A DNA stretch of 63,149 nucleotides, counting the filler, from Hyphochytrium catenoides (lineage: Eukaryota > Protista > Hyphochytriomycota): assembly GCA_900088475.1 (NCBI GenBank). It is 16 parts of 16 records of this genome, joined end to end, with 100 filler letters (N's around TTAATTAATTAA, not from the genome) between each part and the next. Parts side by side here need not be neighbours in the genome. Positions count along the whole stretch, not along the records: positions 53,999 to 56,184 come from FLMG01001086.1; 15 more parts are not named here. The stretch is one strand, 5' to 3'. This document shows, piece after piece, positions 54,180-56,007 of this stretch. The translations under genes and the position numbers were made by a program. The notes beneath the pieces were generated by a model. The model saw only the letters and a program-made list of their open reading frames with translations. It was not told the DNA's origin and did no database searches. Each line of letters opens with the position of its first letter. The first letter of the stretch is position 1.

Positions 54180-55440
54180 CCCATCCATTAACTTGGACGG
54201 GTGGATGCTAGGAAAGGAACACACAGTCTCCTGCTTCCGGAGAAATGCCTCTACGGCTGACATTGTAAGTCTCTCTTTCTCTCTCTCTCTCTCTCTCTCN
54301 NNNNNNNNNNNNNNNNNNNNNNNNNNNNNGTCATTGAAGGGATGATGGGGCTCTATGACTCCAGAGACGGGAAGACAGAGGATGGATCTACGGCTCAGGT
54401 TGCCAAGTGGTGAGACATAGTCGAGAGAGAGAGAGAATAAAAAAAAAGAAAAAGAAAAAGAGCGAGAGAGAGAGAGAGGGAGAGCACACGAGGAGGCCGG
54501 GTTGAACATTGTTTCGTGCGCTCTCCTCCTCGCTTCTGTCCCATCCACATGCTCTCTCTCTCTCTCTCTCTTTTCTGGTCTCTCTCTCTGCCTCTTTCTC
54601 TCTCTCTCTCTATGTCTCTCTCTCTCTCTTTTCTGGTCTCTCTCTCTGCCTCTTTCTCTCTCTCCATCTCTCTCTATCTGTCTCTCTCTCCTTTCTGGTC
54701 TCTCTCTCTGCCTCTTTCTCTCTCTCTCTCTCTCTCTCTGTCTCTGTCTCTTTCTCTTCTCTGCATTTTTTCCTGTTTCTTTGCTCCGGTCTCTCGCGCT
54801 GGTCTGCATGCTCCTTCTTCTCCCCTTCTCCTTGAGCTGAGGTGGTGACGATGCAGGCTCCACGCGCCAGTTATCCTTGTTCTCGATGCGAACACTCTGG
54901 CTCGCAGTGCGGCGGCCATGGTGCTTGGTTACAAGGTCTCTCTTTATATCTCTCTCTTATATTTTCTATTAGACTTCGTGGGATCCCGGATGTCGACTTT
55001 CTCTCCTTCTCTCTGTCTCTCTGTCTCTCTCTCTCTTCTTCTTCTTCTTCCCCTCTTTCTCCCCACAGCTCTCTCCGCCGTTCTCTTTCTCATTGAGGCT
55101 TCTTATCAGGAGTGTCATTATGGAAGGCAGAAGATTCTTTCAATCTCATCGTGGGCCCCATCTCTCTCCTCTCTGTGTGCGTCTCTCTCTCTCTCTCTCT
55201 TCTTCTTCTTGCCTCATTCTTTGTTAGCTCTTCGACCCTGCAGTACATCTCCTCGGCGTCGTGCTGAACAACGTGGCGAGTGCGTCGCATGGTCAATGGC
55301 TGAGAGAGGCGGTGGAGCATGGTCTCAAGGGCAAGCTTGAAAGCGGCGAGATCCCGCCCGTTCTTGGGCTTCTAGAGCGCTGTGCGGATGTTGAGGTTCC
55401 TGAGCGACATCTCGGTCTTAGGCCCCCAGGTAGACACGGG

Positions 55441-55484
<44 letters not shown>

Positions 55485-56007
55485 GTCTTTCTCTCTCTTC
55501 TGTTCTCTCGGTCTTCTTTCCTCTCGGTCTCTTTTTTTACCTTGCTGTTCTTCCTATTCTGTCGCCCTGCTTCTTAAGTTCTCTCTCCCTCGAGCTCTGC
55601 TCTCTCAAATGGTTGAACCGTGTGAGAGTCGTTCTAGGTTCTCTTCTTCTTCTTAAAGAGTGCATGGGCTTCTTGCAATCTCCTCTTCTATTTACTCGAG
55701 CGTCTCTCTCTGTGTCCAATGACTCTCTCTCCTCTCTCCGTCTTCAATCGTCTGCGTTGTCACTGTCTGACGATTTTCTTTCCGTTTCTTCTACATCCAA
55801 AATCATTTAGAAAAGACGCCGTTCACAGCTGCTCGTCTTGAGAAAATGGCCGACTGGATCGAGCGCTGTGTGGACGTGGACGCCTTGCTCGACGCGATCC
55901 CTTCACTCGAGTTGACTGCTTCTACTGTCCCATCTTCCGCCCTGTGCTCTTCCTCAAGCCAAGAGAGGCCAGCCGTGCGCATCGGGGTTGCAAGAGATGA
56001 AGCTTTT
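54180..56007 (+). CDS. cbiA: Cobyrinate/hydrogenobyrinate a,c-diamide synthase (CbiA/CobB family), intron-containing, partial. Exons 54180-54264, about 54330-54409, 54857-54935, 55228-55429, 55811-56007
   Basis: Spliced translation: PSINLDGWMLG...ADI|(gap)VIEGMMGLYDSRDGKTEDGSTAQVAKW|LHAPVILVLDANTLARSAAAMVLGYK|LFDPAVHLLGVVLNNVASASH...VPERHLGLRPP|EK...LEKMADWIERCVDVDALL...VRIGVARDEAF. Motifs are collinear with bacterial CbiA/CobB. Confidence 0.9.

What the first reader, a model, noticed from the sequence alone, without database searches (positions are those of the whole stretch)
54180..56007. Spliceosomal-intron-containing cobalamin-pathway enzyme (cbiA/cobB) in a eukaryotic genome
Seen: five exons join across GT-AG introns into a protein with the CbiA/CobB motifs in order (NLDxWM, VIEGxMGLYD, GSTA, PVILVLDA...ARSAAAMV.G, GVVLN, PERHLGL, RIxVARDxAF). 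One acceptor is hidden by an N gap. The introns carry the same (CT)n tracts as the host's housekeeping genes, which argues against bacterial contamination. Established: CbiA/CobB amidates the corrin ring, its homologue CfbB acts in F430 synthesis, and de novo B12 synthesis is regarded as prokaryote-only. Some microalgae are known to carry late salvage or remodelling cob genes. Inference: this is a domesticated horizontally acquired gene, pointing to corrinoid salvage/completion, a wider eukaryotic corrinoid pathway, or a repurposed tetrapyrrole amidotransferase.
Basis: partly seen in the sequence, partly recalled or inferred. Interest (0 to 1): 0.82.

Follow-up and report, generated by a model that had tools for sequence, protein, structure and literature searches.

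The report
Intron-split CobB-type amidotransferase gene fragment
This short contig holds five spliced exons of a real eukaryotic gene for a CobB/CbiA-type enzyme, which in bacteria amidates the vitamin B12 ring; it is a divergent relative of a little-studied gene family found in many algae, liverworts, oomycetes and dinoflagellates, so it is interesting but not a one-off.

Summary
On the + strand, five exons (54180-54264, 54330-54409, 54857-54935, 55228-55429, 55811-56007) join across GT-AG introns. Together they give a 215-residue peptide covering positions 55-245 of the 420-position CobB model. It is 43-53% identical to a,c-diamide synthases (E about 1e-58) and keeps 46 of 48 highly conserved columns.

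No read bridges the N gap. A read overhang supplies an AG acceptor plus one in-frame codon, which is exactly the one residue the model predicted to be missing.

The gene is not unique. Full-length homologues exist in dinoflagellates, saprolegnian oomycetes, green and streptophyte algae, liverworts, Cyanophora and a chytrid. Most are fused to a Fe/B12/haem-type periplasmic-binding domain. They form one clade next to bacterial CobB. The window's peptide falls inside that clade in the careful tree (100/96), but placing it outside is not rejected (AU p 0.12).

The likely chemistry is ATP- and glutamine-dependent amidation of tetrapyrrole acetate side chains. The physiological role is inferred only; salvage or repair of corrinoids is my best guess. 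No RNA run was listed, so the splicing rests on homology. The P-loop, the glutaminase domain and any fused domain lie off the contig.

Verdict: a new, divergent member of a known but uncharacterised eukaryotic family. Interest is moderate.

The parts
53999..54179 (+). 3' part of the intron upstream of exon 1. It is pyrimidine and (CT)n rich and ends in the acceptor tttAG.
   Evidence: No frame here matches the family.
54180..54264 (+). Exon 1. Its first base completes a split codon, then PSINLDGWMLGKEHTVSCFRRNASTADI.
   Evidence: CobB model positions 55-82.
54265..54329 (+). Intron 1: donor GTAAGT, a (TC)n tract, then the N gap at 54300-54329. The gap hides the rest of the intron, the acceptor and one codon.
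   Evidence: table 7: the X1 overhang before 54330 ends ...GTACAG|AGC; one model position (83) is skipped.
54330..54409 (+). Readable part of exon 2, VIEGMMGLYDSRDGKTEDGSTAQVAK plus TG of a Trp codon. It holds the conserved Glu of the xIEG motif.
   Evidence: model 84-109.
54410..54856 (+). Intron 2 (447 nt, GTGAGA...tgcAG), with a 62-nt CT-rich tandem repeat at 54552-54751.
54857..54935 (+). Exon 3: the G that completes Trp, then LHAPVILVLDANTLARSAAAMVLGYK.
   Evidence: model 111-136.
54936..55227 (+). Intron 3 (292 nt, GTCTCT...gttAG).
   Evidence: The alternative acceptor at 55243 runs into a stop.
55228..55429 (+). Exon 4: LFDPAVHLLGVVLNNVASASHGQWLREAVEHGLKGKLESGEIPPVLGLLERCADVEVPERHLGLRPP plus the G of a Glu codon.
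   Evidence: model 138-193; weak Pfam CbiA hit.
55430..55810 (+). Intron 4 (381 nt, GTAGAC...tttAG), with (TC)n at 55443-55509.
55811..56007 (+). Exon 5: a variable linker, then RIGVARDEAF, the first strand of the glutamine amidotransferase (GATase_3) domain.
   Evidence: model 201-245. An in-frame 6-nt deletion variant lies at 55919.
56008..56184 (+). Start of intron 5 (donor GTAAGA). The next exon, expected to begin CFYY..., lies beyond the contig end.
   Evidence: Reading through hits a stop after 8 codons.

Best explanation
The piece is the middle of a genuine nuclear, intron-rich eukaryotic gene. It encodes the central synthetase part and the first strand of the glutaminase domain of a CobB/CbiA-type tetrapyrrole a,c-diamide synthase. 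It most likely belongs to a eukaryote-wide clade descended from a bacterial cobyrinate a,c-diamide synthase. In most members of that clade, the enzyme is fused at its C-terminus to a class-III periplasmic-binding-protein domain of the kind that binds iron chelates, haem or B12. By homology (inferred), the enzyme uses ATP to activate the c and a acetate side chains of a corrin-type tetrapyrrole and amidates them with ammonia released from glutamine. The eukaryotes that carry it are not known to build the corrin ring. The most likely physiological role (inference, not shown) is therefore cytosolic salvage, completion or repair of imported, incompletely amidated or de-amidated corrinoids, with the fused binding domain holding the ligand.
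For: Gene reality: five exons are colinear on the CobB model. The spliced peptide scores 165-185 bits and 43-53% identity to CobB proteins. Junctions align without gaps and two split codons are restored. The peptide has the consensus residue at 46 of 48 columns conserved in at least 90% of the family, within the 92-100% range of full-length members. Variant contigs in two samples of the same organism carry 6 synonymous and 9 non-synonymous changes, one in-frame 6-nt deletion, and no stop or frameshift.

Eukaryotic host: GT-AG introns with sense-strand pyrimidine bias. Paired variant contigs sit at about half depth (12+11 against about 25), as in a heterozygous diploid.

Family: named eukaryotic homologues are listed. 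Their CobB modules score 406-472 bits on the CobB equivalog model (cut-off 254) and stay below the CfbB cut-off. They keep the P-loop, the GPDFLDP motif and the ECGG cysteine. They start directly at the P-loop with no presequence.

Fusion to Peripla_BP_2: up to 70 bits in Chlorokybus. Its closest solved relatives are iron-, B12- and haem-binding proteins.

Tree: the split between bacteria and eukaryotes plus window is supported at 100/96. In the first data set the tree with window and eukaryotes held together was 6 lnL better than the free tree.
Against: No RNA run was listed, so splicing and expression are unproven for this organism. The P-loop, nearly all of the glutaminase domain and any fused domain lie off the contig, so intactness of the whole gene is unknown. 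The peptide is a long branch (0.94). Forcing it outside the eukaryotic clade costs only 3.9 lnL (AU p 0.12), and the quick tree left it unresolved. No clade-specific signature residues decide the matter. None of its intron positions is shared with the plant or algal homologues. pN/pS of about 0.49 on 15 sites is not significantly below 1. The proposed substrate and role are inference only. Liverworts keep the fused gene although they lack B12-dependent methionine synthase (PMC11439496), which does not fit a simple B12-supply role.
Confidence: 0.72

Rival explanations
1. Independent, lineage-specific transfer. On this reading, the organism took its CobB gene from a bacterium on its own, later gained introns, and is not part of the shared eukaryotic clade.
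For: The quick tree left the peptide unresolved among bacterial rows. The highest pairwise identity is to a bacterial protein (P0128, 52-53%). The AU test does not reject placement outside the eukaryotes (p 0.12). No intron position is shared with other eukaryotes.
Against: The careful tree puts it inside the eukaryotic side at 100/96. The constrained tree was 6 lnL better in the larger data set. Six introns in 215 codons argue for long residence in a eukaryote.
Confidence: 0.18
2. Decaying or silent relic. On this reading, the visible exons look intact, but the gene is broken elsewhere or not expressed.
For: No RNA holder was listed. pN/pS of about 0.49 is only weakly below 1, and exon divergence (2.3%) is similar to intron divergence (about 2.7%). 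Only about 45% of the CobB module is visible.
Against: 46 of 48 conserved columns are kept. There are no stops or frameshifts in 643 coding bases across at least two or three haplotypes, and the only indel is in frame. All ten visible splice sites are canonical.
Confidence: 0.1
3. The enzyme acts on a tetrapyrrole other than a corrinoid, for example a sirohydrochlorin-type substrate as CfbB does, or on an unknown eukaryotic pigment or cofactor.
For: The exons also hit the CfbB model. The fused binding domain resembles haem and iron-chelate binders as much as B12 binders. Liverworts keep the gene without known B12-dependent methionine synthase (PMC11439496).
Against: The summed exon scores favour CobB (129 bits) over CfbB (about 102 bits). 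Eukaryotic relatives pass the CobB equivalog cut-off and fall 160-240 bits short of the CfbB cut-off. No amidated non-corrin tetrapyrrole is known in eukaryotes (my own knowledge).
Confidence: 0.15
4. The contig comes from a second eukaryote, such as an alga, oomycete or other protist, that contaminated the sequenced sample rather than from the labelled organism.
For: The contig is only 2.2 kb and carries no other gene. The nearest relatives are algae and protists. I could not compare coverage or composition with other host contigs.
Against: The stretch is held by two samples of the same organism label, taken years apart (X1 from 2011, X2 from 2017). Both show the same allelic pattern. No sampled eukaryote is closer than about 53-58% identity.
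Confidence: 0.08

Closest known systems
Bacterial cobyrinate / hydrogenobyrinate a,c-diamide synthase (CbiA / CobB; NCBIfam NF002204, TIGR00379; Pfam CbiA PF01656 plus GATase_3 PF07685)
   Same: The motif order is the same and the match is colinear over model positions 55-245. Identity is 43-53%. 46 of 48 conserved columns are kept, including the Glu of xIEG, GSTA, PERHLGL and the start of the glutaminase domain.
   Different: The gene is split by at least six spliceosomal introns and sits in a eukaryotic genome. Only the middle of the protein is visible. There is no cob operon context.
Eukaryotic CobB-like proteins fused to a Fe/B12 periplasmic-binding domain. [quoted passage not shown]
   Same: The window's peptide falls on the eukaryotic side of the tree (100/96), weakly next to Cyanophora. 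The CobB core is the same. The genes are intron-bearing nuclear genes.
   Different: It is a long, isolated branch at about 45-53% identity. No intron positions are shared. Whether it carries the fused binding domain is unknown.
CfbB, the Ni-sirohydrochlorin a,c-diamide synthase of coenzyme F430 synthesis (NF033195)
   Same: It is a homologous enzyme with the same two-domain chemistry, and exons 2-5 also hit this model.
   Different: The summed score is lower than for CobB. Eukaryotic relatives reach 320-400 bits against a cut-off of 560.
Algal cobamide remodelling genes COBT, COBS and COBC (Helliwell et al. 2016, PMC4850488)
   Same: They are a precedent for late cob genes of bacterial type in eukaryotes that use but do not make B12. 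Aphanomyces astaci appears there as a COBT holder and here as a CobB holder.
   Different: They act on the lower ligand and nucleotide loop, not on the ring amides. CobB is not mentioned in that paper.

Membership tests
CobB/CbiA a,c-diamide synthase | Central synthetase region with the conserved motifs in family order | tested here: met
   Colinear hits to NF002204 positions 55-245. 46 of 48 conserved columns are kept. E is about 1e-58 to family members.
CobB/CbiA a,c-diamide synthase | Whole-protein score above the curated cut-off (NF002204, 254 bits) | tested here: inconclusive
   Only 191 of 420 model positions are on the contig. The exon scores sum to about 129 bits. Full-length eukaryotic relatives score 406-472 bits.
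CobB/CbiA a,c-diamide synthase | N-terminal P-loop (GxxxxGKT) and GPDY/FxDP substrate motif | not testable with these tools
   These exons lie upstream of the contig. Both motifs are present in all eukaryotic relatives examined.
CobB/CbiA a,c-diamide synthase | C-terminal GATase_3 domain with the nucleophilic Cys (ECGG) | not testable with these tools
   Only the first strand (RIGVARDEAF) is on the contig. The Cys is present in relatives, except Riccia sorocarpa, which has EGGG.
CobB/CbiA a,c-diamide synthase | ATP- and glutamine-dependent amidation of the a and c acetates of a corrin precursor | not testable with these tools
   This needs an enzyme assay or complementation.
CfbB (F430 pathway) | Score above the NF033195 cut-off (560 bits) and preference over CobB | tested here: not met
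   The exon sum is about 102 bits for CfbB against 129 for CobB. Relatives reach 320-400 bits, below 560.
Eukaryotic CobB clade (mostly fused to Peripla_BP_2) | Phylogenetic placement inside the clade | tested here: inconclusive
   The careful tree split is 100/96 with the window on the eukaryotic side. The constrained tree was better by 6 lnL. Exclusion is not rejected (AU p 0.12).
Eukaryotic CobB clade (mostly fused to Peripla_BP_2) | C-terminal Fe/B12-type periplasmic-binding domain | not testable with these tools
   It would lie beyond the contig end. It is present in Marchantia, Chlorokybus, Myrmecia, Symbiodinium and Aphanomyces and absent in Cyanophora.
Spliceosomal-intron gene | Spliced transcripts | not testable with these tools
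   No RNA run was listed for this stretch. The junctions are inferred from GT-AG sites and gap-free homology.

The most novel reading that the evidence does not exclude
Many eukaryotes that cannot build the corrin ring, probably including this organism, keep an active cytosolic CobB-type amidotransferase, usually tethered to a B12/haem-type binding domain. On this reading, the enzyme re-amidates or completes imported corrinoids. That would be a eukaryotic corrinoid repair or salvage step acting on the ring itself, not described so far. Alternatively, it makes an unknown amidated tetrapyrrole.
Probability: 0.3. Interest if true: 0.75.

Novelty: new member of a known kind. Interest (0 to 1): 0.5.

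Why it matters
Vitamin B12 is held to be made only by prokaryotes. The eukaryotic cob genes known so far act on the lower ligand. A ring-amidating CobB enzyme conserved from liverworts to dinoflagellates and oomycetes, mostly fused to a tetrapyrrole-type binding domain, suggests that eukaryotes process the corrin ring of acquired corrinoids, or use the chemistry for something unknown. This window adds a divergent, intron-dense member from another lineage. The family is testable in tractable organisms such as Marchantia and green algae. The value lies in the family rather than in this fragment.

Tried and rejected
- Pfam on single exons gave only a weak CbiA hit on exon 4; NCBIfam was the informative library.
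- The exhaustive representative search with exon 4 found no relative above 56% identity, so neither the organism nor a close orthologue could be identified.
- P0002, the second-best exon-4 hit, is a frameshifted fragment on a 1.1-kb contig and adds nothing.
- I aligned the exon peptides to Cyanophora to build a window-weighted profile. MAFFT misplaced the short pieces, so no profile search was run.
- Shared intron positions with Marchantia, Auxenochlorella, Myrmecia and Symbiodinium: none found.
- Clade-specific signature residues in the covered region: only two, and they split 1:1.
The small-share runs (X4 and others) hold only (CT)n words.
- Two literature searches were too broad and wasted. 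Targeted searches found no paper characterising eukaryotic CobB.
- No solved structure is detectable by sequence for the CobB module.
- I did not fold any protein, because it would not have decided any open point.

Full report
**What is in the sequence.**

The piece 53999-56184 is pyrimidine-rich on the + strand, with many (CT)n tracts. Five segments with ordinary composition interrupt it. Read in the frames shown and bounded as located, they are:
- E1 54180-54264
- E2 54330-54409
- E3 54857-54935
- E4 55228-55429
- E5 55811-56007

Every visible boundary is canonical. The acceptors are tttAG, tgcAG, gttAG and tttAG. The donors are GTAAGT, GTGAGA, GTCTCT, GTAGAC and GTAAGA. Two codons are split by introns and restored on splicing: TG|G gives Trp and G|AA gives Glu.

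The spliced product is 215 residues, with X at the hidden codon. The minus strand offers only low-complexity 'RERE' frames, the complement of the CT tracts.

**Is it more than chance?**

Each exon peptide on its own hits the NCBIfam CobB equivalog model NF002204. The hits are strictly colinear at positions 55-82, 84-109, 111-136, 138-193 and 201-245 of 420, and sum to about 129 bits. Pfam sees only a weak CbiA match on exon 4.

The spliced peptide scores 165-185 bits with a,c-diamide synthases, at E about 1e-58 and 43-53% identity. It covers residues of about 56-260 of proteins about 455 residues long. In a multiple alignment the junctions fall without gaps.

Of the 48 covered columns that are at least 90% conserved in 54 family members, the window has the consensus residue at 46. 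Full-length members score 92-100% on the same measure.

**The assembly gap.**

No contig of the DNA runs bridges 54300-54329, because the flanking (TC)n tract breaks the assemblies. Three things argue that the two sides are continuous and in frame:
- E1 ends and E2 begins on codon boundaries.
- The CobB model skips exactly one position between them (82 then 84).
- A 50-letter overhang of a run X1 contig, immediately before 54330, ends ...CCTTCAGTCCCGTACAG|AGC (table 7).

Of the three AG dinucleotides in that overhang, only this one keeps the frame. It adds a single Ser codon at a column where relatives carry Ala or Cys. The gap therefore hides the rest of intron 1, its acceptor and one codon. 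This is strong circumstantial support, not a bridging read.

**Eukaryotic and nuclear?**

Introns inside the frame exclude a bacterial contaminant. Two samples with the same organism label, taken in 2011 and 2017, hold the stretch. Where two variant contigs exist, they sit at about half the depth of single contigs (12+11 against about 25 in X1). That is the pattern of a heterozygous diploid locus.

Across these haplotypes the exons carry 6 synonymous and 9 non-synonymous changes (pN/pS about 0.49). There is one in-frame 6-nt deletion in the variable linker, and no stop or frameshift. This fits a working gene, but the sample is too small to prove constraint.

No RNA run was listed, so splicing and expression rest on homology alone.

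**Relatives.**

An exhaustive search of 1.84 billion representatives with exon 4 found nothing above 56% identity. No close orthologue is public.

Among the hits, and in a word search seeded with the Symbiodinium protein, there is a broad set of eukaryotic proteins:
- Dinoflagellates: Symbiodinium ('cbiA') and Prorocentrum.
- Streptophyte algae: Chlorokybus, Mesotaenium and Closterium.
- Liverworts: Marchantia (1007 aa, same name) and Riccia.
- Chlorophytes: Myrmecia, Trebouxia and Auxenochlorella.
- The glaucophyte Cyanophora, the chytrid Rhizophlyctis, and a transcriptome-derived EukProt entry.

Their N-terminal 450-500 residues pass the CobB equivalog cut-off (406-472 bits against 254) and stay well below the CfbB cut-off of 560. 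They keep the P-loop, the GPDFLDP motif and the ECGG cysteine. They begin directly at the P-loop with no presequence, which suggests a cytosolic protein.

Most are fused to a Peripla_BP_2 domain (70 bits in Chlorokybus). Its nearest solved relatives are iron-, B12- (5ysc) and haem-binding (2r7a, 3md9) periplasmic proteins. Oomycetes and dinoflagellates add Kelch repeats and DUF5522.

**Phylogeny.**

In a quick tree of 76 rows the named eukaryotes form one clade (SH-aLRT 97) nested among bacterial CobB. The window's peptide, a long branch of 0.92, stayed unresolved outside it. Holding it together with the eukaryotes nevertheless gave a tree 6 lnL better than the free search (AU p 0.70).

A careful search on 55 rows, with the longest bacterial branches removed, split bacteria from eukaryotes plus window at 100/96. 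It placed the window weakly next to Cyanophora (80/67), inside a group with oomycetes and dinoflagellates (92/95). Forcing the window to the bacterial side costs 3.9 lnL (AU p 0.12).

Membership of the eukaryotic clade is therefore favoured but not proven. I put it at about 0.7-0.75. Signature residues do not decide it.

I mapped the introns of four homologues onto their genomic loci. Marchantia, Auxenochlorella and Myrmecia share a phase-1 intron after residue 40/42. None of the window's six intron positions is shared with them, and Symbiodinium has no intron in this part. The window's dense introns (six in 215 codons) are lineage-specific. This neither supports nor refutes common descent, but it argues for a long residence in a eukaryotic genome.

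**How it most likely works.**

Shown: the gene encodes the central part of a CobB/CbiA-type synthetase domain and the first strand of its glutaminase domain.

Established for the bacterial family (my own knowledge of CbiA and CobB biochemistry): the enzyme activates the c and then the a acetate carboxylates of cobyrinic or hydrogenobyrinic acid with ATP. It amidates them with ammonia produced from glutamine in the C-terminal domain.

Inferred: the eukaryotic enzymes keep this chemistry, since all catalytic motifs are kept in full-length relatives. These organisms are not known to make the corrin ring. The enzyme is tethered to a tetrapyrrole-type binding domain. I therefore favour cytosolic salvage, completion or repair of imported corrinoids that lack the a/c amides.

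Weak points in this reading:
- CobB alone cannot complete cobyrinic acid.
- Liverworts keep the fusion although they lack B12-dependent methionine synthase (PMC11439496).
- The binding domain resembles haem and iron binders as much as BtuF.

A different tetrapyrrole substrate remains possible.

**What is known.**

Eukaryotic algae are known to carry COBT, COBS and COBC for lower-ligand remodelling (PMC4850488). That paper, the CBA1 papers (PMC10828217) and the survey of land-plant B12 metabolism (PMC11439496) do not mention CobB.

The only mention I found is a passing note of a CobB-like transcript in the haptophyte Chrysochromulina brevifilum (PMC4057078). The family is therefore visible in databases but, as far as the searchable literature shows, uncharacterised.

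**Verdict.**

This is a real, intron-bearing CobB-type gene of bacterial ancestry in a eukaryote. It is a divergent member of a widespread eukaryotic family rather than a singular acquisition, and its function is untested.

Novelty: new member of a known kind. Interest: moderate (0.5), mainly because the family itself is an unexplored lead in eukaryotic corrinoid metabolism.

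Noticed in passing
window 54552-54751 and 56097-56173: The introns carry longer tandem units built from CT-rich sequence. There are 3.3 copies of a 62-nt unit in intron 2 and 2.2 copies of a 34-nt unit in intron 5. 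Several read overhangs at 56101 and 56138 suggest that the 34-nt element also occurs elsewhere in the genome.
   Followed up: no
window 55919 (exon 5): The contig of run X2 lacks 6 nt here, in frame, inside the poorly conserved linker. X1 and X2 also differ from the window and from each other at several exon sites, so at least two or three haplotypes or strains exist.
   Followed up: partly
P0142 (Riccia sorocarpa homologue): The glutaminase nucleophile motif reads EGGG instead of ECGG, while Marchantia keeps ECGG. This is either a sequencing or annotation slip, or loss of glutaminase activity in one liverwort.
   Followed up: no
P0140, P0118, P0142, P0143 (liverwort homologues): Liverworts keep a roughly 1007-aa CobB plus Peripla_BP_2 fusion. 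A recent survey found no B12-dependent methionine synthase in them, only CblB and CblJ homologues of uncertain role (PMC11439496). The survey did not look at CobB.
   Followed up: partly
L002, L004, L005 (Marchantia, Auxenochlorella, Myrmecia loci): A phase-1 intron after residue 40/42, just after the GP of GPDFLDP, is shared by a liverwort and two chlorophytes. A phase-2 intron after residue 26/28 is shared by the two chlorophytes. This points to an old, vertically inherited gene in green plants.
   Followed up: partly
L003 (Symbiodinium CCMP2592 locus): The 1283-aa gene has no intron in its first 715 codons. It uses GC donors at two of its four introns, and one junction could not be resolved with GT/GC-AG rules.
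   Followed up: no
P0010, P0063, P0092, P0094-P0097, P0103: In oomycetes, dinoflagellates and some unnamed marine contigs, the CobB-PBP protein continues into a Kelch beta-propeller and a small C-terminal DUF5522 domain. The same four-part architecture in two distant lineages is unexplained.
   Followed up: no
L001 (GCA_012974725.1, 1.1-kb contig): The second-best exon-4 hit, P0002, is a CobB fragment. Its C-terminal 70 residues look like out-of-frame translation, on a very fragmented assembly of unknown organism.
   Followed up: no
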